A model generated the notes under the pieces. The model made no database searches. It was not told where the DNA came from and saw nothing but the letters and a program-made list of their open reading frames with translations. From IMG/VR virus record IMGVR_UViG_3300037882_001770, positions 248,001 to 312,000 of that record: a DNA stretch of 64,000 nt. One strand, written 5' to 3'. Below are positions 32,896-51,455 of this stretch, piece after piece; the stretch's first letter is position 1; every line of letters begins with the position of its first letter. Made by a program: the position numbers and the translations under genes.

Positions 32896-34521
32896 ATGAC
32901 ACAAGACAATTTAACAGCCAAACAACTTGATTACGCTGTATTCTTGCCGGCCATCAGTGGTTTTTATGCTACCTTTGTAGGCAAACAACGTGATCCTGTA
33001 AACGGCCCATACGTGGATCCGGCTCGCTTACCAGCCGGCATTCCAGACATGGAAATGATGAACTGGCTCAATGATCAAAAGGGTATGTTTCCATACAAGT
33101 GGAGTCTGTATTCGGGTGGGCATGCCAACTTAGATCTCAACAAGCAAGACTGGTCCGAGGACATGGTCCGTAACAGAGATCCAAACACCTTGTTGCTAGG
33201 CGATTCGGGTGGATTCCAGATTGCCAAAGGCCTATGGGAAGGCGACTGGAAAGCCAACTCGGGTTGTCCCAAAGCACAGAAGAAGCGTGAAGCTGTGCTC
33301 AAATGGTTAGACAACATCAGCGACTACTGCATGACCTTAGATATACCGACCTGGGTCATTCACGATAAAAAAGCGTCTGCGGCCTGCCAAATTACTAATT
33401 TACAACAGGCAGTAGACGCCACCAAGTACAACAATGAATACTTTATGAAACACCGACGGGGCAAGGCCAATGGCGGTACTAAGATACTAAATGTACTGCA
33501 AGGCGCCGGACACGATGATGCTGATCGTTGGTATGATTTAATGAAAGACTACTGTGATCCTATCAAATATCCCGACACACACTTTGATGGGTGGGCCATG
33601 GGTGGTCAAAACATGTGTGATGTACATCTAGTACTAAAACGTTTGGTAGCGCTGCGTCATGACAATCTGTTACAAGAAGGCATACACGATTGGATGCACT
33701 TCTTGGGCACAAGCAAATTAGAGTGGGCGGTGTTGTTAACTGACATTCAACGTGCCATTCGCAAGTATGTTAATCCAAGTTTCACCATTAGCTTTGACTG
33801 TGCCAGCCCGTTTTTGGCTACAGCCAATGGGCAGGTGTATCATCACATTGACCTTCCACACAACGATAAATGGTGCTACAGGATGAGTCCCATTGCTGAT
33901 GATAAAAAATATAGTACCGACACTCGTCCATACGGCCAGGCAGTTGTAGCAGATGGATTGGTCGATCACTTTGATGAAAGCCCAATCAGTCAACAGTTAC
34001 AAATGAAGGACATTTGTATCTATAAGCCCGGGGTTAGAAAAACTGAGGCCGAACTCAACGGCGAAACATTTGATCCCAACAACATGAGTCACTTTCATAT
34101 TGCACCGGACTTGAACAAGATTGGCAAGAATGGTAAAACAAGTTGGGACAGTTTCAGTTATGCCCTACTTATGGGTCATAATGTTTGGACACATATCGAG
34201 GCTGTGCAACGTGCCAATCGTGCGTATGATTCGGGTACATGGCCAGCTATGATGTGGAATCAAAACGGCGATCATGCCCGATTCAAGGATATTGTGGATG
34301 CCATATTTGCCACACCCGATCGGGCAGAGGCCGAAGCCATAATCGAACACTATGACCGTTATTGGATGGACATTGTGGGCACACGTGGATTCAAAGGCAA
34401 GAAAGCCAAAAATGCCCGTGCTCAATTCAATGTGTTGTTTGAAGTAGAAGAAACCAACGATGGTGTTGACGGAGACGAAATCGAGTTTGATGAATCTAAA
34501 TTGGAGAATTTAAGTGTATGA
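32896..34521 (+). CDS. dpdA: TGT-fold guanine transglycosylase (DpdA-like)
   Basis: DSGGFQ, TLDIP, NVLQG, WAMGG, HFLG, FDCASP, HN motifs; que-pathway context. Confidence 0.8.
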   Translation: MTQDNLTAKQLDYAVFLPAISGFYATFVGKQRDPVNGPYVDPARLPAGIPDMEMMNWLNDQKGMFPYKWSLYSGGHANLDLNKQDWSEDMVRNRDPNTLLLGDSGGFQIAKGLWEGDWKANSGCPKAQKKREAVLKWLDNISDYCMTLDIPTWVIHDKKASAACQITNLQQAVDATKYNNEYFMKHRRGKANGGTKILNVLQGAGHDDADRWYDLMKDYCDPIKYPDTHFDGWAMGGQNMCDVHLVLKRLVALRHDNLLQEGIHDWMHFLGTSKLEWAVLLTDIQRAIRKYVNPSFTISFDCASPFLATANGQVYHHIDLPHNDKWCYRMSPIADDKKYSTDTRPYGQAVVADGLVDHFDESPISQQLQMKDICIYKPGVRKTEAELNGETFDPNNMSHFHIAPDLNKIGKNGKTSWDSFSYALLMGHNVWTHIEAVQRANRAYDSGTWPAMMWNQNGDHARFKDIVDAIFATPDRAEAEAIIEHYDRYWMDIVGTRGFKGKKAKNARAQFNVLFEVEETNDGVDGDEIEFDESKLENLSV

Positions 34522-34876
34522 TCTAATTTTTATCATGTTAGGTCTGTTGTTTATCAAGCACTGGTATGTTGATTTTGTTAATCAAAGCCAAGAGGAAATC
34601 AATAGCAAGAGCAAGTATGGTAGTCTTGATGGCATATCACACAGTGCCAAACACGGACTAGGAACCATATTTGTATTCTTGTTAGTAGGATTAGATCCTG
34701 CCTTGTCGGTGGCACTCGGTACTATCGATATGATTGTTCATTACCATATTGACTGGATAAAAATGAAATTTGGCACCAATGACATCACTACTAAAGAATT
34801 TTGGAGTCAATTGGGATTCGATCAACTTGTACACGCATTTACTTACATTGGACTGGTTTGGATATTATATGTTTGA
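34514..34876 (+). CDS. DUF3307-like membrane protein
   Basis: KHWYVDFVNQ...HSAKH...HYHIDW...DQLVH pattern. Confidence 0.7.
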   Translation: MYDLIFIMLGLLFIKHWYVDFVNQSQEEINSKSKYGSLDGISHSAKHGLGTIFVFLLVGLDPALSVALGTIDMIVHYHIDWIKMKFGTNDITTKEFWSQLGFDQLVHAFTYIGLVWILYV

Positions 34877-35045
34877 AAATCGTTTGACACATTTAGAAGA
34901 ATTACACCAGCAACTTAACAAACGGATTGACGGTATGGAAAGCACTGGAGTGTTCGAGGATGCAACCTTAGAGGTTTTGAAGAAACAAAGGTTGCATTTA
35001 AAGGACGAAATTGCTAAAATCAAACATCAACATAATTTAAAATAA
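34869..35045 (+). CDS. DUF465-like small coiled-coil protein
   Basis: HQQLNKRI...LKKQRLHLKDEI. Confidence 0.65.
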   Translation: MFENRLTHLEELHQQLNKRIDGMESTGVFEDATLEVLKKQRLHLKDEIAKIKHQHNLK

Positions 35046-35053
35046 GGCAGCAC

Positions 35054-35593
35054 ATGGACCGAATTGGACATGAGGAAGTAAATTTCTTTGTAGGAACTGA
35101 AGTAGAGCACACTCCGGCATTTGAACAACTCACACTGTTTGTGGTAGGACTGCAATCTATGACGGATGTCAATCGTCAACTAGAGAATTTAACTTCTTAC
35201 GCTGATCAGAGTCGCAATATCACTCATGTGTATTTTGGTGCCAATCAAAGTTTTCCTAATCCAGCATTTGACGATGCCGCAACATGGAATGCTTGGGAAG
35301 CCATGATTAACAATGTGTTGGCTCAGGGATTCTTTGCCACACTAGATTTAGATGTTACAGCAGTAGAAGGATTACTCGAAAGCAGTTTGGTCGAGCAAAT
35401 GAAATTTATACCAATGATTAGTGTTAAATTACCTTATATCAAACAACTAGGATACAATGCTACTCTTAAAATTGACGACAAAGATTTTAACGCAACAAAC
35501 CCAGGGGTCTGGTGCCACTCGTTACACGACTTACAAAAGCGTGAGGTGTTTACTGACTGGTCTAAATACACAAAGGACGAAGTTATCAAATGA
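35054..35593 (+). CDS. Hypothetical protein in the deazaguanine cluster
   Basis: 179 aa ORF with GTEVEH, HVYFGAN, WCH. Confidence 0.7.
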   Translation: MDRIGHEEVNFFVGTEVEHTPAFEQLTLFVVGLQSMTDVNRQLENLTSYADQSRNITHVYFGANQSFPNPAFDDAATWNAWEAMINNVLAQGFFATLDLDVTAVEGLLESSLVEQMKFIPMISVKLPYIKQLGYNATLKIDDKDFNATNPGVWCHSLHDLQKREVFTDWSKYTKDEVIK

Positions 35594-35916
35594 AAAATTG
35601 GCTAAGACAACGATTAATTAACATATTAGTTGATACTGATGATGGCGTTAAACAACCAAGACCTAGCAGAATCAGTCGTGGAAATATTAGTGTTACATTA
35701 GATGACGGATTGTGTGATGATAGCCCTAGCGGCATTGATCTTCCGGACCCTATTACCTTTAAAGTGCAAGCAGTATCAGGTGGAACAGTAGTTGAATCTC
35801 GTTGGTATGACTATAAGAAAGATGAGCATCGTGTCAAACTGCACATTATCACCCAGGATGAAAACTTATCTGAATCTATTGGCAAAATTGTAACCATGGA
35901 ACTACTACAAAAATGA
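35590..35916 (+). CDS. Hypothetical protein
   Basis: 108 aa ORF, ATGA overlaps. Confidence 0.6.
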   Translation: MKNWLRQRLINILVDTDDGVKQPRPSRISRGNISVTLDDGLCDDSPSGIDLPDPITFKVQAVSGGTVVESRWYDYKKDEHRVKLHIITQDENLSESIGKIVTMELLQK

Positions 35917-36377
35917 TACAACAAGAACGCGAACAAATTGAACGAATTAAATCAAAGGCAGAACGTAAAATCTGGGTTACATTCCGTCGAGAAGGAATCC
36001 ACTGTTATCCAGCAGCAGCCACTGATCCGCAATTAAATACCAACGATGAATACAATGTTGCGTTTCTCGCTAGCCCTCATCGTCATATGTTTCACTTCCG
36101 GGTGTGGATCGATGTCTTCCACAATGACCGAGATATCGAATTCATCCAGTTCAAACGCTGGCTCGAAAATCTTTACAGTGGAACCGGTCCCTATAATGAA
36201 GGTCGAGTTTTAGAATTGAACCATAAATCTTGTGAGATGATCGCAGATGACCTATATATACAGATAGCAGGTCGATATCCAGACCGTGCTGTGTGGATTG
36301 AAGTAGCCGAAGATGGTGAGAACGGTTGCCTCATTAAGTATGAACTTACTCACCCTAACCTCAGTATTAAAATTTAA
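35913..36377 (+). CDS. QueD-like T-fold protein, DpdL-type (putative CDG decarboxylase)
   Basis: LASPHRHMF (LxxxHRHxF in place of QueD CxxxHGH), SCEMIA, EVAEDGENG. Confidence 0.65.
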   Translation: MIQQEREQIERIKSKAERKIWVTFRREGIHCYPAAATDPQLNTNDEYNVAFLASPHRHMFHFRVWIDVFHNDRDIEFIQFKRWLENLYSGTGPYNEGRVLELNHKSCEMIADDLYIQIAGRYPDRAVWIEVAEDGENGCLIKYELTHPNLSIKI

Positions 36378-36388
36378 AAGGAAACATC

Positions 36389-36619
36389 ATGGGCAAGCCT
36401 GTACATCGCCTTAATCCCCGAGCAGTTGCTATTATGGACGATTTGGATAGCTTTTTAGCATTCTGTGTCGACTATGGCTACAGATATAACGAAAGTGATC
36501 TGTACAACTTTAAGAGCTATGCTTGGCAACAATACAACAAATTTAATCAAGGTAAAAATGCCAAGAACATGTGGGATGAAGATACTCGCAGATTCTCAGG
36601 ATATCGTCGCCATGCGTAA
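36389..36619 (+). CDS. Hypothetical protein
   Basis: 76 aa ORF with AGGA RBS. Confidence 0.6.
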   Translation: MGKPVHRLNPRAVAIMDDLDSFLAFCVDYGYRYNESDLYNFKSYAWQQYNKFNQGKNAKNMWDEDTRRFSGYRRHA

Positions 36620-37814
36620 ACTATTCTACATGGGCTTAGAGTCGTACGAGGCTCGGTATACACTACAACTGACTGAATGGAATCGCCGTGTGTTTGAACG
36701 GCGCGGCCTGGATGTGGTTTATGTTCCTGGCACTACTATCGATGACTCCCAAGCTATCTGCGTGGGTCAAGTGCTGGATGCACATGGTCGCAGTTACTTT
36801 GGCATGAGTCAGATGATGAACCTGGTTCAACTAATGCGAAATGGAGAAGTCACTAGTGAAGATGTTATCTACTTTGAAGACATGTTTCAACCCGGTATCG
36901 AGAGCTTGCCTTATATTATGGATCAAGTGCCTGTTACTCACCGTCCTCGTGTTTATGTACGTTGCCTTGCTCAGGCCATTGATCCAGATGACTTTGTTCA
37001 TGTATGGGGTATGGCTAAATGGATGGACCTGTACGAAAAAATGGTTAACGAATTTGTCACAGGTGTATTAGCAACTAATGAAGAGATGGTGGCTCACATG
37101 CGTATTGCAGGGTGGACTGCTCCTATCTACAATATTTCAGGATTGGCGTTTGGCAAAGCAGAAGTTCTAGAGCGTATAGGTGGCTCGCAAAATATCAAAC
37201 CCTTTGCAGAACGTAAACGTCGTGTCGGTTTTGCGGCACGTTGGGATCAAGAGAAGCAACCGGGTTTCTTCATGGACTTGATTGACATGTACGGTGAGTT
37301 AACTACGGAGCCGTGCGAGTTTGCTATATTCCAAGGCGGACCATTACGCAGTAACAATCCTGAATATGTAGAACGTGCCCGACGCATGGAGCGTGAAGGT
37401 AAACTTAAAATTTACGATAACTTAACTAAGAACGAATACTATGCTCTTGTCAACGACACTCGCGTATTGTTTAATTGTGCTTTACAGGACTGGGTGTCAA
37501 ACACAGTCTCAGAAGCAGATACACTTGGAGCAAATGTTTTATATCCTGCTTATCGTAGCTTCCCTGAAACTTTTGCAGATGACCCAAACCGGCTTTATGT
37601 TCCTTGGTCAATAGATGATGCCTATCACAAAATGCAAAACTTGTTACGTGAACCACATCATAACATGGGCTTGATCAGTGATTGGACTGATGGAACTGTT
37701 GATCGCATTGTAGACATTTTAGAAGGCAAGGGCGAGCAATGGAATCGTGCAGGCAATCGCTATCGAGATCATGTAAGCCAGGCCAAATACCATGTAAGGA
37801 AGATCGAATCATGA
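36612..37814 (+). CDS. GT-B glycosyltransferase
   Basis: Start MRKLFYMGLE; GFAARWDQEKQPG, LFNCALQDWVSNTVSEA, LYPAYRSFPE (GT4-like donor-binding region). Confidence 0.7.
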   Translation: MRKLFYMGLESYEARYTLQLTEWNRRVFERRGLDVVYVPGTTIDDSQAICVGQVLDAHGRSYFGMSQMMNLVQLMRNGEVTSEDVIYFEDMFQPGIESLPYIMDQVPVTHRPRVYVRCLAQAIDPDDFVHVWGMAKWMDLYEKMVNEFVTGVLATNEEMVAHMRIAGWTAPIYNISGLAFGKAEVLERIGGSQNIKPFAERKRRVGFAARWDQEKQPGFFMDLIDMYGELTTEPCEFAIFQGGPLRSNNPEYVERARRMEREGKLKIYDNLTKNEYYALVNDTRVLFNCALQDWVSNTVSEADTLGANVLYPAYRSFPETFADDPNRLYVPWSIDDAYHKMQNLLREPHHNMGLISDWTDGTVDRIVDILEGKGEQWNRAGNRYRDHVSQAKYHVRKIES

Positions 37815-38761
37815 AAGTTGTAGTTACTGGTGCGGCCGGGTACATTGGCGGAGAAACACTAATCAAGTTAGTCGATGCCGGACATGATGTACTGGCTATA
37901 GATCGTGTGATGCCACCAGGTAGTTTAATTTCGGTTCCTTGCCAATGGCACACTGGTGATTTTGCCAGTGAACTAGGAATAGACGCTATCAAGTTGTTTT
38001 GCCCTGATGCTATTATTCATTGTGCCGGTACTAGTTTGGTCGGACCAAGCCTAGAGCATCCAGAAGAATACTACAATAATAACTTTATTAAAACTAAAAT
38101 TCTATTAGACTATTTGGTCAAGAATCATGACAAACAAGTTAGATTTATTTTTAGTTCAAGTGCCGCAACCTACGGTAATCCCATCATGACTCCGGTTCAA
38201 GAAATTGATCCAACTGAGCCAATTAGTCCATACGGCCAAAGTAAGTTAATGATTGACTGGATGTTACAAAGTTATCAGCAAGCCTACGGATTAGACTTTG
38301 TGTCATTTCGTTACTTTAATGCTTGCGGTGCTGATAGTCAAGCCCGACACGGTCAGCCACCAGGAGCTACTCATATCATTGCTCGTGTGTTAGAATCAGT
38401 TAAAAATAACACTGACTTTACTTTGTATGGCACCGATTATCCCACTGATGATGGTACTTGTATTCGCGACTATATCCACGTGGAAGATCTAGCAGAAGCA
38501 CACATTATTGCTATAGACCAAACCATCCCCAGCGGTGTTTATAATCTCGGTACTAATGCCGGTAACAGTAATCTTGCAGTTGTACAATTAGCTTCGCAGA
38601 TAGTCAGCCGAGATATTCCGGTACTACACGGACCTCAACGAAAAGGTGATCCTGCTATCCTTACTGCTGATGCTAGCAAGTTTATGAGCGTGAGCTCTTG
38701 GGCTCCAAGATTTACGTTACATGATATTATTACCCACGCATGGGCCTGGTATAATAAATGA
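37811..38761 (+). CDS. galE: UDP-glucose 4-epimerase
   Basis: TGAAGYIG, FSSSAATYG, YGQSK, FRYFNACGA, DGTCIRDYIHV. Confidence 0.9.
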   Translation: MKVVVTGAAGYIGGETLIKLVDAGHDVLAIDRVMPPGSLISVPCQWHTGDFASELGIDAIKLFCPDAIIHCAGTSLVGPSLEHPEEYYNNNFIKTKILLDYLVKNHDKQVRFIFSSSAATYGNPIMTPVQEIDPTEPISPYGQSKLMIDWMLQSYQQAYGLDFVSFRYFNACGADSQARHGQPPGATHIIARVLESVKNNTDFTLYGTDYPTDDGTCIRDYIHVEDLAEAHIIAIDQTIPSGVYNLGTNAGNSNLAVVQLASQIVSRDIPVLHGPQRKGDPAILTADASKFMSVSSWAPRFTLHDIITHAWAWYNK

Positions 38762-39348
38762 GTTTCCAAGCATTATTTGATTTTGAATCTGCGCTAGCTG
38801 AATATACCGGCGCACCTTACGTAGTACTAACTGACGGTTGTACTCATGCTCTAGAACTTTGTTTTCGTTACGACAAAATCAAAGAAACTGCATTTACACC
38901 ATATACCTACTTGAGTGTCCCTATGCTTATGCATCACTTGGGGATCAAGTATGAATATCATAACCAAGAGCATAGACAAAAGTGGACAGGTGAATACAAG
39001 TTCGAATGTACACGTATCTGGGACTCGGCTCGTAGACTAGAACGCAACATGTACCACCCAGGACAAATGCAGTGCCTGAGTTTTGGATGGACCAAACCTC
39101 TACAACTGGGCAAGGTAGGCGCCATCCTTCTTGACGACGCAGAAGCACATCGCGTCATGAGTCGGCAACGGTCAGATGGTAGAGATCTACATGTGCCATG
39201 GGAAACCGAAACCGAATTGATCTTGGGTTATCACTATTGCCCCACTTTGGAACTATGCGTAAAGGGATTAGAATTATTACCCGTTATAGAACCCCGGTCA
39301 CAACCTGGCATTTATCCAGACTGTAGAAATATTTTGTTTACTACTTGA
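38758..39348 (+). CDS. Short DegT/DnrJ-like PLP aminotransferase
   Basis: GCTHALEL, WDSAR, SFGWTKPL (PLP lysine), GAIL; only 196 aa. Confidence 0.7.
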   Translation: MSFQALFDFESALAEYTGAPYVVLTDGCTHALELCFRYDKIKETAFTPYTYLSVPMLMHHLGIKYEYHNQEHRQKWTGEYKFECTRIWDSARRLERNMYHPGQMQCLSFGWTKPLQLGKVGAILLDDAEAHRVMSRQRSDGRDLHVPWETETELILGYHYCPTLELCVKGLELLPVIEPRSQPGIYPDCRNILFTT

Positions 39349-39373
39349 TAAAGATCTAAATAACTGTTATAAT
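39345..39373 (+). promoter_or_regulatory. Sigma70-like promoter with nested TAAATA
   Basis: TTGATA-N17-TATAAT; ATCTAAATA in the spacer. Confidence 0.6.
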
Positions 39374-39425
39374 AGCAACAAGACTGGTCATCCTCGACCA
39401 CAACAAATAACTCGGAGAAAATGCA

Positions 39426-40256
39426 ATGCCTAAATATGTTTCACCTGAAGAACAAAAGATAGAAGATTTAAAATCACGAAAATATGCAGACGAAGCGCCG
39501 TATCATCCTGGCTACGAAGATGCGGCCTTGGGACCAATCGCATTCGACGAAGACAAAGACTACAAGGAAGCTAATCTAGCCGATGCCATTAGATTTAACA
39601 TGCGGCGCGATAAGAAACGTTTTTGGGCCGGTGATAACATTAGTGATTATCTGCACGAAGGCGATAAAGAACGCCTTATCAATGAAGCTACGGTGGCTTT
39701 TGAAAAAGTGTTAGATACCTTGTTGATTGATCGTGAAACAGACCCTAACAGCCGAGGCACAGCACGTAGACTGGCCAAGATGTATTTTAACGAAATTATG
39801 GAGGGTAGATATGCGCCAGCCCCAGATGCAACAGCTTTTCCGAATGATTCAGAAGACCGCTATGAAGGTATGTTGGTTGTTCGTAGTGAGTTACGAAGTA
39901 TATGCAGTCATCACCATCAGCCTGTCAGTGGTGTTGCTTATATTGGCATCATCGCCGCCAACAAACTTATCGGTCTTTCTAAGTATACTCGGATCGCTCA
40001 GTGGTGCGCTCGCCGTGGTACTCTACAAGAAGAATTATGTAACGACATTGCAAGAGAAATAATGCGAGCCACAGACTCAGAAAACGTGGGTGTGTATGTA
40101 CAGGCCACGCATGGGTGTTGTGAAAATCGTGGTATTATGGCACATTCCAGTCTAACACAGACTACCGTGCTTCGAGGTTCGTTCCAAACAGATCCCGGCA
40201 CTAAAAAAGAGTTCATGGACAATATCAAACTACAACAGGACTTTGCGCCAAGATGA
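39426..40256 (+). CDS. folE: GTP cyclohydrolase I
   Basis: SICSHHHQP, GLSKYTR, QEEL, HGCCENRG. Confidence 0.95.
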   Translation: MPKYVSPEEQKIEDLKSRKYADEAPYHPGYEDAALGPIAFDEDKDYKEANLADAIRFNMRRDKKRFWAGDNISDYLHEGDKERLINEATVAFEKVLDTLLIDRETDPNSRGTARRLAKMYFNEIMEGRYAPAPDATAFPNDSEDRYEGMLVVRSELRSICSHHHQPVSGVAYIGIIAANKLIGLSKYTRIAQWCARRGTLQEELCNDIAREIMRATDSENVGVYVQATHGCCENRGIMAHSSLTQTTVLRGSFQTDPGTKKEFMDNIKLQQDFAPR

Positions 40257-44052: not shown

Positions 44053-44061
44053 AGAAATACA

Positions 44062-44586: not shown

Positions 44587-44615
44587 AAATTAAGATTTAT
44601 TTGCTTAAGGACTAA

Positions 44616-45509
44616 ATGACAAGACCGTTTAAAATTGCAGTATTGTTACCCACTCGTGGAAGGACTGATGCCTTGGCTCGTAGTATCATTAGCCTGTTTA
44701 ATCGAGCTGTGGACAAAAGCAGCATTCAGTTGATGATGATTTTTGATCACGACGACGATATAGGGTATGGATACTTTGAAAGAAAAATTCGGCCTTGGCT
44801 GGACGATCACGAAATCGACTATACTGCACTCGGAGTCGACAGCATGGGGTATGAGGGTCTTAATCGTTATTACAACACTATGGCAGAATCATGTGATGCT
44901 GATTGGTTTTTTATCTGGAACGATGATGCTATCATGGAAACTACTGGCTGGGATCAAATAATTACCAAAAACACAGGCGAATTTAAGCTGTTGGCTGTAC
45001 GCACACACAACGATCATCCTTACAGTATTTTTCCTATTATTCCTCGTGAGTGGTACGATCTATTTGGCTTGTTGAGCCGTCATCAGATGATCGACGCAGA
45101 GTTTAGTCAGCTTGCATACATGCTCAATATATTTGAACGAGTAGATATTTTTGTTACCCACGACCGTGCAGACCTCACCGGCAACAATGCCGACGAAACT
45201 GACAAAAAACGTGTGAGATTCGAGGGCAATCCAGAAAATCCGCATGACTTTCATCACACTCTCTACTCTAAGCAACGTCTTGTTGACGCAGAAACCATAG
45301 CACAATATATGAAGTCAATTGGCATGGACGTAGAATTTTGGACCAATGTCAAGGCTGGCAAACAGTATCCATGGGAACAACTGATCAAAAATGACACTAA
45401 CAAACAGATGAGACAATTTGGCGTAACAGTAGATCCTGTCACAAACAAAGTGGTTGCTATCAAACCAGACGATCATGCAAACATAGTAAGGCAACAAAAT
45501 GAATCTTGA
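44616..45509 (+). CDS. GT-A glycosyltransferase (GT2-like)
   Basis: LLPTRGR, FDHDD, FFIWNDD. Confidence 0.8.
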   Translation: MTRPFKIAVLLPTRGRTDALARSIISLFNRAVDKSSIQLMMIFDHDDDIGYGYFERKIRPWLDDHEIDYTALGVDSMGYEGLNRYYNTMAESCDADWFFIWNDDAIMETTGWDQIITKNTGEFKLLAVRTHNDHPYSIFPIIPREWYDLFGLLSRHQMIDAEFSQLAYMLNIFERVDIFVTHDRADLTGNNADETDKKRVRFEGNPENPHDFHHTLYSKQRLVDAETIAQYMKSIGMDVEFWTNVKAGKQYPWEQLIKNDTNKQMRQFGVTVDPVTNKVVAIKPDDHANIVRQQNES

Positions 45510-46734
45510 TATCATTACCAGTAAAAAAATTGATCAGTGCTTGATTACCAGTTTGCCAGTTACTAAAGTTTTAGATTTTGGTCAGCATTCTTATGCTGAT
45601 ACTTTTATTAGCCAAGATCAATATCATCTCAGCGAGCCAGTGTTTCCTTTACAGGTCATGCTGTGTCCAGATTCAGGCATGATACAGTTAGGATATGTCA
45701 GCAACGCCGAAGCAAGATATAATTTATACAGCTACAGTTACACTTCCAGTAATAGCAAAACTGCAAGAGATCATTGGGATCGTTATGCCGCCACTATTAA
45801 AAATACCTACGGGGTCAACGGACTAGTTGTTGAGATTGGCAGCAATGACGGATATCTAATTGGACAGTTTAATGGCGAAGCTACCACAGCACTTGGAGTT
45901 GACAGTAGCAAAGAAATGTGTCGTCTTGCCAAGAACAAAGGAGTCGAAACAGTACACGGATTATTTGATTTCGGTACTGCCCAGTCTCTAAAAAACACAC
46001 ATGGCACAGCAAAAATTATTATGGCCAATAATGTGTTTAATCATGCCAACGACCCGCTGGCATTTGCCAAAGCAGTTGGCGAATTGTTAGACCCAGAGTC
46101 AGGTGTATTTGTATTCGAAGTGCCATACTGGCTCAGTATGGTCCAAAGTGGCCGCTTTACAGATATGGTCTATCACGAACATCCTAGCTATTTTACAGTA
46201 AAGAGTCTTTGGAATTTGCTTAAAATTGCAGGGCTAGAAATTACAGATTATCAAATAGTAGACTACCATGGCGGAAGTCTGAGAGTACATGCTCGTTGTG
46301 ATACTGGTGCAGACATGCCAGACTTGATTACCCATGCAATACTTCAAGAACACGTAGCTGGAATATTCCTGCCAGAGTTTTATCAAAATCTTCAAAGAAA
46401 ATTTGAATTGCAACGAGCTGAATGGTTGTATAATTTTAATCAGATTTACATGACCGATCCCGATGCTGTGTTTATTGGCATTGGTGCAGCCGCAAAAGCA
46501 AACACCTGGCTAACCTGGCACGGCCTCAATGCTACCCACTTGCATTGTATTACCGACGCTAGCGAATACAAGCAAGGCAAATACACCCCGCTGAGTAGAA
46601 TTCCTATTTTAGGCGACAACGAGTTTGCCAATCATCCGGCTCCGTATGCGTTGATTTTAAGTTGGAATATTAGCGAAGGCCTCAAGAAATCCATACTAAA
46701 TATCAACCCCAACACAAGGTTTATTTCACAATGA
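45499..46734 (+). CDS. NDP-sugar C-methyltransferase-like protein
   Basis: VEIGSNDG, ANNVFNH, YHEHPSYF, HGGSLR, GAAAKANT, LILSWN. Confidence 0.85.
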   Translation: MNLDIITSKKIDQCLITSLPVTKVLDFGQHSYADTFISQDQYHLSEPVFPLQVMLCPDSGMIQLGYVSNAEARYNLYSYSYTSSNSKTARDHWDRYAATIKNTYGVNGLVVEIGSNDGYLIGQFNGEATTALGVDSSKEMCRLAKNKGVETVHGLFDFGTAQSLKNTHGTAKIIMANNVFNHANDPLAFAKAVGELLDPESGVFVFEVPYWLSMVQSGRFTDMVYHEHPSYFTVKSLWNLLKIAGLEITDYQIVDYHGGSLRVHARCDTGADMPDLITHAILQEHVAGIFLPEFYQNLQRKFELQRAEWLYNFNQIYMTDPDAVFIGIGAAAKANTWLTWHGLNATHLHCITDASEYKQGKYTPLSRIPILGDNEFANHPAPYALILSWNISEGLKKSILNINPNTRFISQ

Positions 46735-47138
46735 AACACTACAATATTCACAGCAACCAAGAGCCTGGTCTAGGTGTACATCAAGACGATCGCGGTACCA
46801 TTGCAGATATTTTTTATAAATTAAATGTAAATCACGGTTGTTTAATCAGCAATGCTCCCGGAGCAGTGCGTGGCAATCATTATCACAAATTAACAACACA
46901 GTACACCTTTATTGTAGCCGGCAGTTTGGAATACTATAGCAAATCTGTCGACAGTGACAAGCCAGCTCAAGTGCTATCAGCAAAGGGCGGGGATTTTATT
47001 ATTAGCGAACCAAACGAGATCCATGCACTCCGCGCTGGCGCACAAGGGTGTGTGTTTATAGCATTTGCTGAAGGCCCTCGTGGTGGTGAAGACTACGAAA
47101 ATGACACATTTCGAGTAGACTCAATTATTCCACAATGA
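46731..47138 (+). CDS. Cupin (sugar epimerase/isomerase-like)
   Basis: DDRG, RGNHYH, PNEIH. Confidence 0.8.
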   Translation: MKHYNIHSNQEPGLGVHQDDRGTIADIFYKLNVNHGCLISNAPGAVRGNHYHKLTTQYTFIVAGSLEYYSKSVDSDKPAQVLSAKGGDFIISEPNEIHALRAGAQGCVFIAFAEGPRGGEDYENDTFRVDSIIPQ

Positions 47139-47728
47139 AAAAAACTGTAGCGATTTTTGGAGCAAGTGGCGGCATTGGACGAGCTGTTAGGCAAGCCTTC
47201 CTGGATGCCGAATACACAGTTATTCCGGTCAGTCGTACCTTGATTGATTTTGCCGGTACTGATGCTGAACGTCAAATACAAGAATTTTTAAGTTTATCCA
47301 CACCGGATGTAGTGGTCAACTGCGTTGGAAAGTTTAGCAACAATGACGAGCCAGCCGGCCCACTCATGAACATAAACTTCAACAGCAATTGGGCAATAGT
47401 TCAACACTATTTAAAAAATCCACAGCCGGTTAGGGTTATTATTGTTGGGTCAAGTGCATACAAATCTGGCAGAAAAGATTACATGGTGTACAGCGCCAGC
47501 AAGGCTGCCCTATACAACCTATGGCAAGGTGCAAGAGATACGTTTGCTGAAACCGAAGTACGAGTCGACTTAGTTAATCCTGTAAGAACTCGTACCAAAA
47601 TGGTTGAACCATTTAACACAGAACTAGATTATCTGGAGCCACAAGAAGTTGCAAAATGTATTTTACAATTGGATCAATGGAACGATCCCAGCAGATGCGT
47701 AGACATAACTTTTAAGGATGCAAAATGA
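47135..47728 (+). CDS. Short-chain dehydrogenase/reductase
   Basis: GASGGIG, VVVNCVG, YSASK. Confidence 0.9.
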   Translation: MKKTVAIFGASGGIGRAVRQAFLDAEYTVIPVSRTLIDFAGTDAERQIQEFLSLSTPDVVVNCVGKFSNNDEPAGPLMNINFNSNWAIVQHYLKNPQPVRVIIVGSSAYKSGRKDYMVYSASKAALYNLWQGARDTFAETEVRVDLVNPVRTRTKMVEPFNTELDYLEPQEVAKCILQLDQWNDPSRCVDITFKDAK

Positions 47729-48498
47729 AAATAGGATTATTAGGACGCGGTACTGTAGGCAAAGCTGTCTATGAAGGGCTGGAATATCTAGGCCACGAAA
47801 TGAGTTTCTTTGACCCAGCCTACGAAGGCTCACACATTGAGGACGTGCTGTCAACTGACTGTGTGTTTATTTGTGTACCGACTGATCAGGCAGCCAACGG
47901 CGACTGTGATACCAGTATTGTAGACCGTGTGGTCAAAGATCTTGCTGAACGCAATTATACTGGATTGGTATCTATTAAAAGCACAGTAGTTCCTGGGACC
48001 ACCGAGCGTCTACAAAAAACCTACCCTGAGTTAAGATTAAGCATGGTTCCAGAATTTTTACGTGCTAAAAGTGCATTGGCTGATTTTGTATACAATCATG
48101 ACCTATTAGTTGTGGGCTGTAACAACAAAGAGGATGCGGAACTTCTAGTAGAAATCCACGGAAGTTTTCCTGAAAACATTGCTCGTGTAAGTCCTACTGA
48201 AGCCGAAGTGATCAAATATTTTAACAACGTACATCATGCTATGAGTGTGACCTTTGCCAACATCACATATGATGTATGCGACAAGCTAGGCGCCAACTAT
48301 ATGAATGTGTACAAGGCCATTACCAAACGTGAATGCATCAATCCTCATTACCTAATGGCCAATCCGAACATGCGAGGATACGGCGGGCATTGTTTGCCAA
48401 AAGATACCAGCGCATGGAACAACTTGATTCAAAATTTAGGATTAGACTTTGGATTAATTCAAGCAGTAATCAACGACAACGAGAAATTTAACAAATGA
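47725..48498 (+). CDS. UDP-glucose/GDP-mannose 6-dehydrogenase family, lacking the C-terminal domain
   Basis: GRGTVG, FICVPT, IKSTVVPGT, PEFL, AEVIKY, GYGGHCLPKD. Confidence 0.85.
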   Translation: MKIGLLGRGTVGKAVYEGLEYLGHEMSFFDPAYEGSHIEDVLSTDCVFICVPTDQAANGDCDTSIVDRVVKDLAERNYTGLVSIKSTVVPGTTERLQKTYPELRLSMVPEFLRAKSALADFVYNHDLLVVGCNNKEDAELLVEIHGSFPENIARVSPTEAEVIKYFNNVHHAMSVTFANITYDVCDKLGANYMNVYKAITKRECINPHYLMANPNMRGYGGHCLPKDTSAWNNLIQNLGLDFGLIQAVINDNEKFNK

Positions 48499-49406
48499 AA
48501 ATACTAGTAACCGGTGCCAGCGGCTTGTTGGGCACAGAAATCTGCCGCCAACTCAAACAAAACAAAAAAAATGTAGTATGGGCCATGGACAATCATTCCA
48601 GAAGCGAAAGCATTCCGCCCTGTGATAAGTTTATCGAAGTAGACCTAACCGCTGGCGATGTCGCGTATGCAGAGTTACCTATAGACTTTGATTATATCTA
48701 TCACTATGGTGCAATCAACGGTACTAAAAACTTTTACGAACGCCCAAATCAAGTATTATGGAACAACATGATTGGCGACTTCAATGTTTTTGAGTTTGCA
48801 GGCATGAATAAAAAACTAAAGAAACTAGTGTATGCTTCTAGTAGTGAAGTAGTCAGCGATGATCCAAAAAGCCCTGTACCAGAAAATACAAATATCACAA
48901 TCAACAATATTCACAACGCTAGATGGAGTTATAGACTGCCAAAGATATGTGCCGAGAATTACCTGGCCAACAGCAATTTGCCATATGTCATGATTCGATA
49001 TTTTAATGTGTACGGTGACAACAGCAAAGCAGGGCATTTTTTAGCAGACCAAATTGAGAAAATTCAAAACGGTGTATTCGAAATTATCGGGCCCAAAGAA
49101 ACTCGTAGTTTTTGTCACGTGGAAGACGCAGTAAGGGCTACAATTTTCTGCGCAGAGAACGCAAATCGCGAACTGTTTAACATTGGCAATGATCGAGAAA
49201 TCACTATCAAAGATGCTGCCCAAATTATTGCAGCTGAACTTGGACATGCTTCGCCTAAATGGAAAACCACTCCAGGTAAAGCCGGTAGTACACCAAACCG
49301 CAGACCAAACATCAACAAGCTCAAAAAGCTCATGAAGGATTACAAGCCCATGACATTTGAACAAGGCATCAAACAAATCATTGCCAATCGCGTTGACAAA
49401 AAGTAA
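48495..49406 (+). CDS. NAD-dependent epimerase/dehydratase (UDP-glucuronate decarboxylase-like)
   Basis: TGASGLLG, ASSSEV, RWSYRLPK, RYFNVYG, TRSFCHV. Confidence 0.85.
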   Translation: MKILVTGASGLLGTEICRQLKQNKKNVVWAMDNHSRSESIPPCDKFIEVDLTAGDVAYAELPIDFDYIYHYGAINGTKNFYERPNQVLWNNMIGDFNVFEFAGMNKKLKKLVYASSSEVVSDDPKSPVPENTNITINNIHNARWSYRLPKICAENYLANSNLPYVMIRYFNVYGDNSKAGHFLADQIEKIQNGVFEIIGPKETRSFCHVEDAVRATIFCAENANRELFNIGNDREITIKDAAQIIAAELGHASPKWKTTPGKAGSTPNRRPNINKLKKLMKDYKPMTFEQGIKQIIANRVDKK

Positions 49407-49422
49407 GTGCGTAGTGTATAAT
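49393..49422 (+). promoter_or_regulatory. Sigma70-like promoter
   Basis: TTGACA-N18-TATAAT. Confidence 0.6.
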
Positions 49423-49427
49423 AGTAT

Positions 49428-49961
49428 ATGAAAAAAATATATTATACCTGGCAAGATGTTGAGAAACAAACCCAAGAAATTCTACGCCAACTTCAGCGCG
49501 ATGCATGGATGCCCGACTATGTAGTAGGACTCACTCGTGGTGGACTAGTACCAGCTAATTTGATTAGTCAATACCTCGAGGTTCCAATGGAAACACTTAA
49601 GGTTAGTTTGCGTGATGATAACTCGCAACCAGAAAGTAATTTATGGATGGCCGAAGATGCTTACGGGTATACCATCCATGATCCTATGTGTAACGGTGAT
49701 GGCCGTAAGAATATTCTTATTGTAGACGATATCAATGATTCGGGTGCTACACTTAACTGGATCAAACAAGACTGGATGAGCAGTTGCATGCCAGTTGACA
49801 GCCGTTGGGATCATGTATGGAGCAATAATGTTCGTGTAGCTGTGCTAGTGGATAACGAAGCAAGCACCAGTGAATTAAATGTTAGTTATTCAGCTGTCGA
49901 CCTAAATAAGGCTGAAGAAGATTCGTGGATTGTTTTTCCTTGGGAAGATTGGTGGAAATAA
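49428..49961 (+). CDS. Type I phosphoribosyltransferase (Gpt-like)
   Basis: VGLTRGGL, ILIVDDINDSGATL, WIVFPWE. Confidence 0.9.
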   Translation: MKKIYYTWQDVEKQTQEILRQLQRDAWMPDYVVGLTRGGLVPANLISQYLEVPMETLKVSLRDDNSQPESNLWMAEDAYGYTIHDPMCNGDGRKNILIVDDINDSGATLNWIKQDWMSSCMPVDSRWDHVWSNNVRVAVLVDNEASTSELNVSYSAVDLNKAEEDSWIVFPWEDWWK

Positions 49962-49965
49962 ATTT

Positions 49966-50550
49966 ATGTTTTGCATGACCAAAGGTCCGCTGGCCTGGAT
50001 CAAGATAGCTAAAAATGCTTGTAGCAGTTGGCAGTATGCCTTGACTCAAGACGGGTGGTCACTTGAAAATCTATCTGACTATCAAGGGCGATGGCATGAA
50101 AAAACATGGTTCGCATTTTTACGGGAGCCATATGCTAGACATACCATGGGACTGGCAGAATTTTTAGACAGGAACAATTTGTTTTCTATTCTAGATCATC
50201 CAGCGTATTCCAAGGTGGTCTGTTCTGTACTGTGTGACGAGCATACCTACAGTGTGCACCATATGGTTCCACATGAACTAATACAACAAACCAACTGGTT
50301 TGTAATTGATCATGCGCATTTTGATTACGAAGAGTTAACTCGTCGTTTTTGTAAGTCTTATAATATTCAGATTCCGCCAATCCCCACCCTTAATCAATCC
50401 AGAGACGAGATTAAACAAATACGTAGTAGAATTGATCTTATTAAACAACAAAACCCTTCTGTGTTTGGATCGGTTGCAAAAAATTATCTTGAAAGAGATG
50501 TTTTTCTGTATGCAAAAGCCGACGGCAGTCAGTCAAAATTTGACGTGTAG
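49966..50550 (+). CDS. Sulfotransferase-like protein
   Basis: IKIAKNACSS and FLREPYAR resemble the 5'- and 3'-PAPS-binding motifs. Confidence 0.45.
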   Translation: MFCMTKGPLAWIKIAKNACSSWQYALTQDGWSLENLSDYQGRWHEKTWFAFLREPYARHTMGLAEFLDRNNLFSILDHPAYSKVVCSVLCDEHTYSVHHMVPHELIQQTNWFVIDHAHFDYEELTRRFCKSYNIQIPPIPTLNQSRDEIKQIRSRIDLIKQQNPSVFGSVAKNYLERDVFLYAKADGSQSKFDV

Positions 50551-50597
50551 TACACAGTTATGTTATACTGTTATATCAACTTATACCTATTAATATT

Positions 50598-51455
50598 ATG
50601 AAAATTAAAGTCAGCGAAATATTTTACAGTCTACAAGGCGAAGGTCGTTTTGTAGGAGTGCCCAGCGTATTCTTACGCACTTATGGTTGTAACTTTACCT
50701 GTTCAGGGTTTGGTTGCAAACCAGGAGAAAAGAGTGCAGGTGCAGACGAAGTTGCTAAAACAGTAGAGCTGTACAAAACATTTAACGACTTGCCTTTGGT
50801 AGAAACAGGGTGTGACAGCTATGCATCATGGCATCCTGCCTACAAGCACCTAAGTCCTACACAGACCACAGAAGAATTGGTAGAACGCATGCTGGCCCTA
50901 ACCCCTAACAATGCATGGCAACAAAACAACGGCAATGACGTACACTTGGTCATCACCGGCGGCGAACCCTTGTTAGGGTGGCAACGTGCTTACAAAGAGT
51001 TGTTAGAGCATCCACGCATGGCAGACTTAAAAAACATCACGTTTGAAACCAACGGAACTCAGGAACTACATGAAGATTTTAAATTGTACTTGGATTACTG
51101 GGCCTGCGACGGTGGAAGAGAAGTTACGTTCAGTGTAAGTGCCAAGCTGAGTGCCAGTGGCGAGAAGTGGGAGGAAGCTATTCGTCCAGAAATTGTCAAC
51201 AGTTATGAAGCTTACGGACATACATATCTTAAGTTTGTAGTAGAAACCGATGATCATATTCGTGATGCTATTCGTGCCACTGATGAATTTCGTGCCGGTG
51301 GATTTCAAGGAGTAATTTACTTGATGCCGCAGGGCGGCGTGGTCGAACCATACGATCGGAACAAGTTGCGCATTGCCAATATCTGCTGTGAACAAGGGTG
51401 GAACTACAGCCCTAGATTACACGTGGATCTCTGGGGCAACGGCTGGGGAAAGTAA
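50598..51455 (+). CDS. queE: 7-carboxy-7-deazaguanine synthase (radical SAM)
   Basis: EIFYSLQGEG, FLRTYGCNFTC...GCDS, ITGGEP, FETNG, PRLH. Confidence 0.93.
   Translation: MKIKVSEIFYSLQGEGRFVGVPSVFLRTYGCNFTCSGFGCKPGEKSAGADEVAKTVELYKTFNDLPLVETGCDSYASWHPAYKHLSPTQTTEELVERMLALTPNNAWQQNNGNDVHLVITGGEPLLGWQRAYKELLEHPRMADLKNITFETNGTQELHEDFKLYLDYWACDGGREVTFSVSAKLSASGEKWEEAIRPEIVNSYEAYGHTYLKFVVETDDHIRDAIRATDEFRAGGFQGVIYLMPQGGVVEPYDRNKLRIANICCEQGWNYSPRLHVDLWGNGWGK

What the first reader, a model, noticed from the sequence alone, without database searches (positions are those of the whole stretch)
32896..51455. 7-deazaguanine DNA modification pathway without QueC but with a DpdL-type T-fold protein
The window encodes FolE, QueD and QueE (GTP to CDG, established pathway) and a TGT-fold DpdA-like enzyme next to the polymerase and clamp. 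A second T-fold protein (35913-36377) carries LxxxHRHxF rather than the QueD CxxxHGH motif; from memory this is the signature of the DpdL CDG-decarboxylase type. No queC, queF or arcS lies in this 64 kb. The TGT keeps the catalytic Asp motifs but lacks the usual CxCxxC zinc cluster. Inference: genomic G is replaced by 7-deazaguanine or 7-carboxy-7-deazaguanine rather than preQ0, preQ1 or G+.
Basis: partly seen in the sequence, partly recalled or inferred. Interest (0 to 1): 0.78.

Follow-up and report, generated by a model that had tools for sequence, protein, structure and literature searches.

The report
Sugar-linked 7-deazaguanine DNA modification cluster
A lake-water jumbo phage carries the known QueC-less (DpdL-type) gene set for swapping guanine in its DNA for 7-deazaguanine. 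The set also holds a conserved glycosyltransferase and sugar-supply genes that nobody appears to have linked to this pathway, so the final base may carry a sugar.

Summary
The window encodes FolE, QueD and QueE, a DpdL-type T-fold protein with the exact LxxxHRHxF signature, and a 541-aa protein. That protein has no Pfam or PHROG hit but folds as a tRNA-guanine transglycosylase. It keeps both catalytic Asp residues and lacks the zinc cluster. No QueC or QueF is found in the 64 kb window, and no QueC in 192 related IMG/VR loci.

The pathway type is already known (Cellulophaga phage phiST, Acidovorax phage ACP17). The transglycosylase is not the phiST-type DpdA3. It belongs to a separate 'long' family shared with ACP17, PA5oct and others.

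It sits beside DpdL in 12 of 13 DpdL lineages that carry the long transglycosylase, and in none of 8 that carry the short DpdA3. It is followed by GalE here, and by mannose-activation genes in a sister clade.

My best reading is that G is replaced by a 7-deazaguanine that is further glycosylated. This is inferred, not shown. Plain dDG remains a strong rival. LC-MS of DNA from cultured PA5oct or ACP17 would decide it.

The parts
28388..31045 (+). Family B DNA polymerase (context; marks the upstream edge of the conserved block)
   Evidence: Pfam DNA_pol_B 3.5e-38 and exonuclease domain. Same position in 71 of 80 related loci.
32121..32891 (+). Clamp-like protein (context)
   Evidence: 33% identical (E 3e-38) to a Phosso protein annotated as a sliding clamp. 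No Pfam or PDB sequence hit. The name rests on annotation only.
32896..34521 (+). Long TGT-fold transglycosylase (DpdA-like); proposed to exchange G in DNA for the deazaguanine base
   Evidence: AF2 model pLDDT 88.4. Foldseek top 50 are all TGT, E 4e-8. D103 and D301 invariant, no Zn-site Cys. hhalign: E. coli TGT 90.8%, ACP17-type DpdA 97.9%. Present in 71 of 71 related loci with enough upstream sequence.
35054..35593 (+). Conserved 179-aa protein of unknown function
   Evidence: Present in 70 of 71 clade loci. Homologue in ACP17, ASD50402, E 1e-13. Only a weak GH18-like lead from the Atlas, score 0.89.
35913..36377 (+). DpdL (QueD paralogue; proposed CDG decarboxylase)
   Evidence: LASPHRHMF motif. 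phrog_17812 2.1e-34. 52% identical to ACP17 DpdL and 35% to phiST DpdL. All invariant DpdL columns kept.
36576..37814 (+). GT4/GT-B glycosyltransferase. The ORF opens at GTG 36465; the likely start is M38 at 36576.
   Evidence: 10 of 11 family members hit Pfam Glycos_transf_1, best 8e-12. AF2 pLDDT 82. Foldseek hits are MshA, BshA, glycogen synthase and PimA, E about 1e-10. 66% identical to the protein next to DpdL in Synechococcus phage BUCT-ZZ01. Present in 56 of 56 clade loci.
37811..38761 (+). UDP-glucose 4-epimerase GalE. The ORF opens at 37739; the likely start is 37811.
   Evidence: NCBIfam TIGR01179 scores 293 bits, above the cut-off of 262. Rossmann motif starts at M25. Present in 40 of 47 clade loci.
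38758..39348 (+). 196-aa protein with only the N-terminal part of a DegT-type aminotransferase; function unknown
   Evidence: Pfam DegT 2.5e-9 over residues 8-63 only. Present in 40 of 47 clade loci.
39426..40256 (+). GTP cyclohydrolase I (FolE)
   Evidence: Pfam 1.1e-38. Present in 46 of 47 clade loci.
43403..43789 (+). HIT-family nucleotide hydrolase or transferase (accessory; role unknown)
   Evidence: Pfam HIT 3.4e-8. Present in 18 of 36 clade loci with at least 9 kb downstream.
44062..44586 (+). QueD (CPH4 synthase)
   Evidence: Pfam PTPS 1.6e-12. PHROG QueD-like 6.5e-32.
44616..45509 (+). Second glycosyltransferase (weakly supported)
   Evidence: PHROG glycosyltransferase 3.5e-7. Present in 20 of 36 clade loci.
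45499..49406 (+). Variable sugar-tailoring cassette: C-methyltransferase, cupin, SDR, short NDP-sugar dehydrogenase, epimerase/dehydratase
   Evidence: Pfam Methyltransf_13/14/23, cupin, adh_short, UDPG_MGDP_dh, Epimerase. NCBIfam. Most of these genes (C-methyltransferase, cupin, SDR, short dehydrogenase) recur in only 5-7 of 36 clade loci, so the link to the DNA pathway is unproven.
49428..49961 (+). Xanthine/guanine-type phosphoribosyltransferase
   Evidence: Pfam Pribosyltran 3.5e-17. NCBIfam xanthine PRT 8.7e-14, below cut-off. Homologues lie in the PA5oct and BUCT-ZZ01 modules, beside the TGT-like gene in L010, and in 45 of 71 loci of the sister clade.
50598..51455 (+). QueE (CDG synthase, radical SAM)
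   Evidence: PHROG QueE-like 1.8e-53.
52723..53199 (+). RfaE-II-like sugar-phosphate nucleotidyltransferase (possible donor activation)
   Evidence: Pfam CTP_transf_like 6e-13. NCBIfam rfaE_dom_II 1.9e-21, below cut-off. 62% identical to a gene in the L007 module.

Best explanation
This is a 'class II' DpdL-type guanine-replacement module of a freshwater jumbo phage.

Established chemistry of the enzyme families: FolE, QueD and QueE turn GTP into 7-carboxy-7-deazaguanine (CDG).

Inferred steps:
1. DpdL removes the carboxyl group to give 7-deazaguanine. This is the proposal of Cui et al. 2023 and has never been shown in vitro.
2. The long TGT-fold enzyme swaps this base for G in phage DNA by the two-Asp transglycosylase mechanism.
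3. The GT4 glycosyltransferase next to DpdL, fed with UDP-galactose or UDP-glucose by the adjacent GalE, adds a hexose. It could act on the free base before insertion or on the base in DNA. A second glycosyltransferase and a variable tailoring cassette may elaborate the sugar.
4. The xanthine/guanine-type phosphoribosyltransferase returns the excised guanine to GMP and then GTP, which feeds FolE again.

The result would be DNA with no ordinary G, which resists G-dependent restriction.

My confidence in a 7-deazaguanine-type DNA modification without preQ0 is about 0.85. My confidence that the final base carries a sugar is about 0.45.
For: - Gene identities.
- DpdL signature and homology.
- TGT fold and catalytic Asp residues.
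- GT4 fold and family.
- GT4 lies next to DpdL in PA5oct, ACP17, BUCT-ZZ01, X1/BUDD, Phosso, BCSR5 and L007.
- 18 of 28 DpdL-bearing phage records hold this GT4, and 18 of 23 GT4-hit records hold DpdL.
- In the window's clade, GT4 is in 56 of 56 loci, GalE in 40 of 47 and the TGT-like gene in 71 of 71.
- In loci found with GT4 as the query, 44 of 47 have DpdL and 45 of 47 have the long TGT-like gene. A mannose-phosphate isomerase/nucleotidyltransferase fusion lies directly upstream of GT4 in 40 of 71, and a phosphomannomutase is present in 12.
- Of 21 DpdL clusters, 12 have GT4 plus the long gene, 8 have the short DpdA3 without GT4, 1 has the long gene without GT4, and none has the short gene with GT4.
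- QueC is absent from all 192 related IMG/VR loci.
- PA5oct DNA resists five G-containing restriction enzymes (PMC12191111).
- DpdL plus DpdA of ACP17 alone gave no dDG in E. coli, and the authors suggested that further enzymes are needed (PMC10516641).
Against: - 7-deazaguanine has no hydroxyl group, so the acceptor atom for a GT4 enzyme is unclear. Known GT4 acceptors are O, S or Se.
- No mass-spectrometry data exist for any GT4-bearing phage.
- dDG without a sugar was measured in phiST, and in vibriophage VP1 (whose gene architecture I did not check), with closely related DpdL proteins.
- On the DpdL tree, only 3 well-supported independent contrasts exist. The sign test gives p = 0.5, so co-evolution of GT4 with the pathway is not statistically demonstrated.
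- One lineage (L181) has DpdL and the long enzyme but no GT4. Three GT4 loci lack a detectable DpdL.
- The window's module is also interrupted by unrelated genes (the FG-GAP protein and DUF3307), so adjacency alone is weak evidence for the downstream sugar cassette.
- QueC could lie in the 253 kb of the contig that I could not read.
Confidence: 0.5

Rival explanations
1. Plain dDG (or dCDG). The module stops at base exchange. The GT4, GalE and sugar cassette serve another target, such as virion proteins or the host envelope, and merely travel with the module.
For: - dDG with full G replacement was measured in phiST, and also in VP1 (architecture not checked); phiST carries a homologous DpdL.
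- The sugar-tailoring genes between QueD and QueE are variable, most of them present in 5-7 of 36 relatives.
- Unrelated genes such as the FG-GAP protein also sit inside the module.
- 7-deazaguanine offers no obvious acceptor for a GT4 enzyme.
- Phage glycosyltransferases with non-DNA targets are known (own knowledge).
Against: - It does not explain why this particular GT4 subfamily sits beside DpdL in T4-like cyanophage, T4-like Busanvirus, PA5oct-like jumbo phages, the 469-kb Phosso, and Xanthomonas and Burkholderia phages.
- It does not explain why 44 of 47 GT4-seeded loci carry DpdL.
- It does not explain why different sugar-donor genes (GalE here, mannose activation in the sister clade) flank it in different clades.
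Confidence: 0.33
2. Pre-replicative nucleotide route. The phosphoribosyltransferase converts CDG or DG plus PRPP to a 7-deaza-GMP analogue, as ToyH and TubC do in toyocamycin and tubercidin synthesis. The analogue is then reduced, phosphorylated and built in by the phage PolB. MazG- or HIT-type hydrolases deplete dGTP. The TGT-like enzyme would be auxiliary or act on another substrate.
For: - The PRTase is a recurrent module member: window, PA5oct, BUCT-ZZ01, L010, 45 of 71 loci of the sister clade, and some class I loci.
- A MazG-like gene lies at 55787-56341 and a HIT gene at 43403-43789.
- phiST also has a MazG-like gene next to DpdL.
- Full replacement of G is easier to explain before replication (own reasoning).
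Against: - The TGT-fold enzyme keeps both catalytic Asp residues across 89 diverse members and is nearly universal in the module.
- The PRTase is missing from several complete modules (ACP17, X1, BCSR5).
- The PRTase looks like a xanthine/guanine salvage enzyme, which fits recycling of excised guanine equally well.
Confidence: 0.1
3. Not a DNA system. The TGT-like enzyme modifies tRNA, or the genes make a soluble glycosylated pterin or deazapurine. Precedents are biopterin glucoside made by a GT4-type enzyme, and mannosyl-queuosine.
For: - The GT4 profile gives a non-significant hit to tetrahydrobiopterin glucosyltransferase, E 1.6.
- The Atlas lists a queuosine mannosyltransferase cluster at rank 50.
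- FolE, a PTPS-fold enzyme, an SDR and a GT are the ingredients of pterin glycoside synthesis (own knowledge).
Against: - QueE and the DpdL/DpdA context point to deazapurines.
- The module always sits among replication genes, from PolB to RNase H.
- The window encodes no tRNA.
- PA5oct DNA itself shows G-specific restriction resistance.
- The closest structural matches for the GT4 are generic.
Confidence: 0.05

Closest known systems
Cellulophaga phage phiST dDG system: FolE, QueD, QueE, DpdL, DpdA3 (Cui et al. 2023, PMC10516641)
   Same: QueC-less pathway from GTP to CDG. It has a homologous DpdL with the LxxxHRHxF signature and a TGT-superfamily enzyme, and it sits near replication genes.
   Different: - phiST uses a short (259 aa) DpdA3 with an LDNSAFE-type first motif. 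The window has a 541-aa enzyme with the canonical GDSGGFQ motif, only marginally alignable to DpdA3.
- phiST has no GT4, no GalE and no PRTase.
Modules of Acidovorax phage ACP17, Pseudomonas jumbo phage PA5oct, Synechococcus phage BUCT-ZZ01, Xanthomonas phage X1, Sinorhizobium phage Phosso and Burkholderia phage BCSR5
   Same: Same architecture: long TGT-like enzyme, GT4, DpdL, FolE, QueD, QueE, and a PRTase in PA5oct and BUCT-ZZ01. PA5oct DNA resists G-site restriction enzymes.
   Different: - None of these has a published nucleoside analysis.
- They lack the GalE gene and the sugar-tailoring cassette seen here.
- The window's PolB is uninterrupted, whereas PA5oct's is split by a homing endonuclease.
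T-even phage glucosyl-hydroxymethylcytosine (GT-B DNA glucosyltransferases)
   Same: A GT-B fold glycosyltransferase encoded beside base-modification and replication genes. The logic is the same: sugar decoration as anti-restriction armour (own knowledge; fold).
   Different: There the acceptor is the hydroxymethyl group of a pyrimidine, and the enzymes are not GT4 relatives. Here the base is a purine analogue with no known acceptor hydroxyl. No sequence relationship was tested.
Mannosyl- and galactosyl-queuosine in eukaryotic tRNA
   Same: A 7-deazaguanine base inserted by a TGT enzyme and then glycosylated from a nucleotide sugar. A queuosine mannosyltransferase cluster appears among the GT4's Atlas look-alikes.
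   Different: The sugar there goes on the cyclopentenediol of queuosine, which this pathway cannot make because it lacks QueC, QueA and QueG. The nucleic acid there is tRNA, and the similarity is a low-rank lead only.
Toyocamycin and tubercidin biosynthesis (GCH-I, CPH4 synthase, CDG synthase, PRPP transferase, decarboxylase)
   Same: GTP to CDG, followed by a phosphoribosyltransferase and a decarboxylation (own knowledge).
   Different: Those pathways make free nucleoside antibiotics, use a UbiD-type decarboxylase rather than a T-fold protein, and have no TGT enzyme.

Membership tests
DpdL (proposed CDG decarboxylase, Cui et al. 2023) | QueD/PTPS-fold paralogue homologous to phiST CGPG_00067 and to the ACP17 DpdL | tested here: met
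   tblastn: 52% identity to ACP17 (5e-36) and 35% to phiST (8e-9). Aligns with QueD over the shared His and Glu columns.
DpdL (proposed CDG decarboxylase, Cui et al. 2023) | Signature LxxxHRHxF in place of the QueD CxxxHGH motif | tested here: met
   LASPHRHMF at residues 52-60. L52, H56, H58 and F60 are invariant in 14 DpdL sequences. The signature is as published.
DpdL (proposed CDG decarboxylase, Cui et al. 2023) | Co-encoded with FolE, QueD, QueE and a DpdA, with no QueC | tested here: met
   Met within the 64-kb window and in all 192 related IMG/VR loci. The rest of the 317-kb contig could not be read.
DpdL (proposed CDG decarboxylase, Cui et al. 2023) | Decarboxylates CDG to 7-deazaguanine | not testable with these tools
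   Never shown biochemically, even for the founding members. Heterologous expression failed.
TGT superfamily / DpdA DNA transglycosylases | TGT TIM-barrel fold | tested here: met
   AF2 pLDDT 88.4. Foldseek top 50 PDB hits are all TGT, E 4e-8, TM by target 0.55. Atlas neighbours carry TGT and DpdA Pfam families.
TGT superfamily / DpdA DNA transglycosylases | Two catalytic aspartates (DSGGFQ and xFDC motifs) | tested here: met
   D103 and D301 are invariant in 89 sequences. They align to the E. coli TGT motifs LTDSGGFQ and MFDCV.
TGT superfamily / DpdA DNA transglycosylases | CxCxxC...H zinc site | tested here: not met
   No conserved Cys column in the family alignment. No CxCxxC in the sequence. 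A helical C-terminal domain is predicted instead.
TGT superfamily / DpdA DNA transglycosylases | Matches the curated Pfam models TGT (PF01702) or DpdA (PF23859) | tested here: not met
   No Pfam family at E<=0.01. A family profile finds no TGT in PDB sequences. Homology shows only by profile-profile and fold comparison.
TGT superfamily / DpdA DNA transglycosylases | Acts on DNA rather than tRNA | not testable with these tools
   Indirect only: its position among replication genes, and the G-site restriction resistance of PA5oct DNA.
DpdA3 subfamily (phiST CGPG_00065 type) | Sequence membership in the phiST/Campylobacter-phage DpdA3 group | tested here: not met
   - hhalign 87.5% over 82 columns against phiST alone.
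- hhalign 68.6% against a 6-member DpdA3 profile.
- Iterative HMM searches from either side do not connect the two groups.
- The DpdA3 profile against the ACP17-type long family gives only 16%.
GT4 / GT-B retaining glycosyltransferases | GT-B two-Rossmann fold | tested here: met
   AF2 pLDDT 82, pTM 0.83. Foldseek hits MshA, BshA, glycogen synthase, PimA and PglA at E 1e-10 to 1e-8, TM about 0.6.
GT4 / GT-B retaining glycosyltransferases | Match to Pfam Glycos_transf_1 and an acidic EX7E-type motif | tested here: met
   10 of 11 family members match PF00534, best 8e-12. The window's own copy reaches only 0.038 against Glyco_trans_1_2. The invariant E313 lies in a QDWVSNTVSE / QETLGISxxE block.
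GT4 / GT-B retaining glycosyltransferases | Transfers a sugar from a nucleotide sugar; identity of the acceptor | not testable with these tools
   Only context: GalE adjacent here, and mannose-activation genes adjacent in the sister clade.
GalE (UDP-glucose 4-epimerase) | Score above the curated NCBIfam equivalog cut-off | tested here: met
   TIGR01179: 293 bits against a cut-off of 262.3.

The most novel reading that the evidence does not exclude
Phages of this architecture (this lake jumbo phage, PA5oct, ACP17, BUCT-ZZ01, X1, Phosso, BCSR5) replace G with a glycosylated 7-deazaguanine derivative. That would be the first sugar-bearing purine in any DNA. The hexose type would be set by clade-specific donor genes (galactose or glucose here, mannose in the sister clade), and a variable tailoring cassette would diversify the glycan in an arms race with modification-dependent nucleases. 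The long TGT-like enzyme may have evolved to insert the bulky pre-glycosylated base. This would also explain why DpdL plus DpdA of ACP17 were inactive on their own in E. coli.
Probability: 0.4. Interest if true: 0.9.

Novelty: new variant of a known kind. Interest (0 to 1): 0.62.

Why it matters
7-deazaguanine replacement is one of the few known ways in which a virus rewrites a purine in its DNA. Eight derivatives are known and none carries a sugar. The chemistry of the DpdL branch is also unresolved, because no enzyme activity has been reconstituted.

This analysis splits DpdL systems into two architectures. It shows that one of them always brings a dedicated glycosyltransferase and often its own sugar-donor genes. 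That gives a concrete missing component and a simple mass-spectrometry prediction, testable in phages already in culture, including the therapy candidate PA5oct.

If the sugar is real, it matters for four things:
- restriction and CRISPR evasion;
- modification-dependent defences (END nucleases, Dag glycosylases);
- sequencing of such phages;
- enzymatic tools for labelling DNA.

The transglycosylase family is also very large: 930 clusters at 50% identity, none with a Pfam hit among those listed. It therefore marks G-modified phages that current annotation misses.

Tried and rejected
- A HMMER profile of the 541-aa family against PDB sequences found no TGT. Only profile-profile and fold comparison did.
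- Isoelectric points were tried as a crude DNA-binder test for the GT4. All module proteins are acidic, including the DpdA3 proteins, so this is uninformative.
- Tree-based test of co-evolution. The GT4 state needs 3-7 changes on the DpdL tree, but only 3 independent contrasts are supported (p = 0.5), so no statistical claim is made.
- IMG/VR scans seeded with the phiST or Ahp1 DpdL returned nothing. The diverse GT4 alignment was too divergent to seed a scan.
- Sequencing runs: only weak holders, all lake-water metagenome contigs with a share of 0.05-0.06 and no raw or nanopore reads. Read laying was therefore not used, and no read-level evidence for modified G could be sought.
- QueC elsewhere in the genome. 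The contig outside the window could not be read. A QueC tblastn against the phage collection listed no class II phage among 60 of 180 records, which is suggestive only.
- The supplementary tables of Cui et al. 2023 are not held. I therefore could not see which DpdA subfamily the authors gave ACP17.
- Pterin-glycoside and tRNA readings were considered and ranked low (see the rival explanations).
- The 179-aa protein gave only a sub-threshold GH18-like lead.

Full report
**What the window is.** All but one of the likely genes lie on the + strand, and G+C is about 0.42. The DNA has no near match among 50,697 phage records. The window's own protein sits on a 317,493-bp contig. The only sequencing runs that hold related words are lake-water metagenomes. 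Relatives in IMG/VR come from contigs of up to 353 kb. This is therefore a freshwater jumbo phage. Its replication block is syntenic with Pseudomonas phage PA5oct: PolB 50% identical, RNase H 51%.

**The observation.**
- FolE (39426-40256), QueD (44062-44586) and QueE (50598-51455) are confirmed by Pfam and PHROG.
- The 154-aa protein at 35913-36377 has no Pfam hit but matches phrog_17812 (2.1e-34) and carries LASPHRHMF.
- Cui et al. 2023 define DpdL by exactly this change, CxxxHGH to LxxxHRHxF.
- The protein is 52% identical to the ACP17 DpdL and 35% to the phiST founder. It keeps all 14 invariant columns of a 14-member DpdL alignment.
- No ORF of 100 aa or more in the window hits QueC, QueF or ArcS-type Pfam models.

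**The TGT-like enzyme.**
- The 541-aa protein (32896-34521) has no Pfam or PHROG hit.
- It belongs to a very large, unannotated viral family: more than 7,000 proteins among the candidates scored in the 90%-identity collection, and 930 representatives at 50% identity.
- In 89 diverse members, only S73, D103, S104, G106, H268 and D301 are invariant.
- D103 (GDSGGFQ) and D301 (SFDC) align to the two catalytic motifs of E. coli TGT (hhalign 90.8%).
- The AlphaFold model (pLDDT 88.4) finds only TGT structures in the PDB top 50. Atlas neighbours carry the TGT and DpdA Pfam families.
- There is no conserved Cys cluster, so the zinc site is absent family-wide.
- The family is not the phiST-type DpdA3. 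It aligns at 97.9% (E 4e-13) to the 416-446-aa enzymes of ACP17, X1, BUCT-ZZ01 and BCSR5. It aligns at only 68.6% to a profile of short DpdA3 proteins. Those two groups barely align with each other (16%).
- Other members of the 541-aa family sit next to QueC (L005), next to a PRTase (L010), next to a methyltransferase (L011), or alone in a small phage (L008). That range of contexts is what one expects of a base-exchange enzyme serving different deazaguanine supplies.

- The ORF after DpdL (36465-37814; likely start 36576) is homologous to the gene that lies next to DpdL in PA5oct and ACP17.
- It is 66% identical to the DpdL neighbour in Synechococcus phage BUCT-ZZ01.
- It has counterparts next to DpdL in X1/BUDD, Phosso (annotated as a glycosyltransferase) and BCSR5.
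- Ten of eleven family members match Pfam Glycos_transf_1. The model is a GT-B fold closest to MshA, BshA, glycogen synthase and PimA.
- The next gene is GalE, scoring above the curated cut-off.
- In the window's own clade, the order PolB, p370, clamp-like, TGT-like, p179, DpdL, GT4, GalE, DegT-like, FolE is fixed. The TGT-like gene is in 71 of 71 loci, GT4 in 56 of 56 and GalE in 40 of 47.
- In a sister clade reached from L007, the GT4 is instead preceded by a nucleotidyltransferase/mannose-phosphate-isomerase fusion (40 of 71 loci) and accompanied by a phosphomannomutase (12 loci).
- In that sister clade, 44 of 47 loci with enough flank also carry DpdL and 45 of 47 carry the long TGT-like gene.
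- QueC was found in none of the 192 related IMG/VR loci.

**Two architectures.** I clustered DpdL from 82 DpdL-seeded loci at 65% identity, which gave 21 clusters:
- 12 have GT4 plus the long TGT-like enzyme.
- 8 have a short phiST-type DpdA3 and no GT4.
- 1 has the long enzyme without GT4.
- None has the short enzyme with GT4.

dDG was demonstrated for the short-DpdA3 architecture in phiST. It was also reported for vibriophage VP1, whose architecture I did not check. No GT4-bearing phage has been analysed chemically. For PA5oct there is only resistance to five G-containing restriction enzymes.

The pattern is suggestive but not proven. On the DpdL tree the GT4 state needs 3-7 changes, and only three supported independent contrasts exist (p = 0.5).

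**Mechanism.**
- Established family chemistry gives GTP to CDG.
- DpdL as a decarboxylase and the TGT-like enzyme as a DNA transglycosylase are inferences taken from the literature and from conserved catalytic residues.
- The glycosylation step is my inference from conserved adjacency and from donor-supply genes of two different kinds. Its weak point is the acceptor, because 7-deazaguanine has no hydroxyl group.
- The GT4's structural relatives mostly act on small molecules. It may therefore decorate the free base (or CDG) before a roomy long-type enzyme inserts it. It could equally act on DNA.
- The PRTase resembles xanthine/guanine salvage enzymes. It recurs in both architectures. Recycling of excised guanine into GTP is the most economical reading. 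A ToyH-like nucleotide route is the rival.
- The cassette at 44616-49406 holds a second GT, a C-methyltransferase, a cupin, an SDR, a short sugar dehydrogenase and an epimerase. It is variable among close relatives: the second GT is in 20 of 36, and most of the others in 5-7 of 36. It may tailor the glycan or serve something else.

**Novelty and verdict.** What appears unreported in the searchable literature is twofold. One is the dedicated GT4 and its sugar-supply genes as a conserved part of one DpdL architecture. The other is the distinction between the long TGT-like family and DpdA3. I rate the finding a new variant of a known kind. It has moderate-to-high interest because the prediction can be tested directly on cultured phages.

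Noticed in passing
window 14218-18855: A 1545-aa protein with an Amidoligase_2 domain (residues 1019-1087, 1.4e-5) and a faint nucleotidyltransferase hit. It is otherwise unannotated.
   Followed up: no
window 7712-10848: The phage encodes a full DnaJ (J domain plus C-terminal domain) followed by a 759-aa ClpB/Hsp104-type double-AAA+ chaperone.
   Followed up: no
window 58612-63412: Transporter genes in a phage genome: a TctA-family tricarboxylate transporter subunit, a DctP-type solute-binding protein and an MFS sugar transporter.
   Followed up: no
window 22896-23336 and 21204-22148: A ferritin-like protein (2.4e-20) and a protein with two GNAT acetyltransferase domains.
   Followed up: no
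window 34514-34876: A DUF3307 membrane-like protein is inserted between the TGT-like gene and p179. No homologue was found in any of 80 related loci, so it is a recent insertion.
   Followed up: partly
window 47725-48498 and 38758-39348: Two sugar-pathway genes look truncated. The nucleotide-sugar dehydrogenase covers only profile positions 71-295 of 413. The 'DegT' protein keeps only about 60 N-terminal residues of the aminotransferase profile. The latter is nevertheless conserved in 40 of 47 relatives.
   Followed up: partly
window 28388-31045; L001, L005, L011: PolB is one uninterrupted gene here. In PA5oct it is split by a homing endonuclease, and in the metagenomic relatives L005 and L011 by intein-like inserts.
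   Followed up: no
window 40908-43418: An 836-aa FG-GAP/VCBS-repeat protein sits between FolE and QueD. It is present in only 9 of 36 relatives and is probably unrelated to the pathway.
   Followed up: partly
L013 (Xanthomonas phage X1) 8344-8877: In X1, a 'PAPS reductase family' (PP-loop) protein lies between FolE and the GT4. It might be a divergent QueC-like enzyme in a DpdL-bearing module.
   Followed up: no
L134, L142, L147: Three IMG/VR loci have GT4, FolE, PRTase and QueE (two of them also the long TGT-like gene and QueD) but no detectable DpdL within about 6 kb upstream or 10 kb downstream.
   Followed up: partly
window 1690-2436 (- strand): PhoH (4.3e-74) is the only clear gene on the minus strand of the window.
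   Followed up: no
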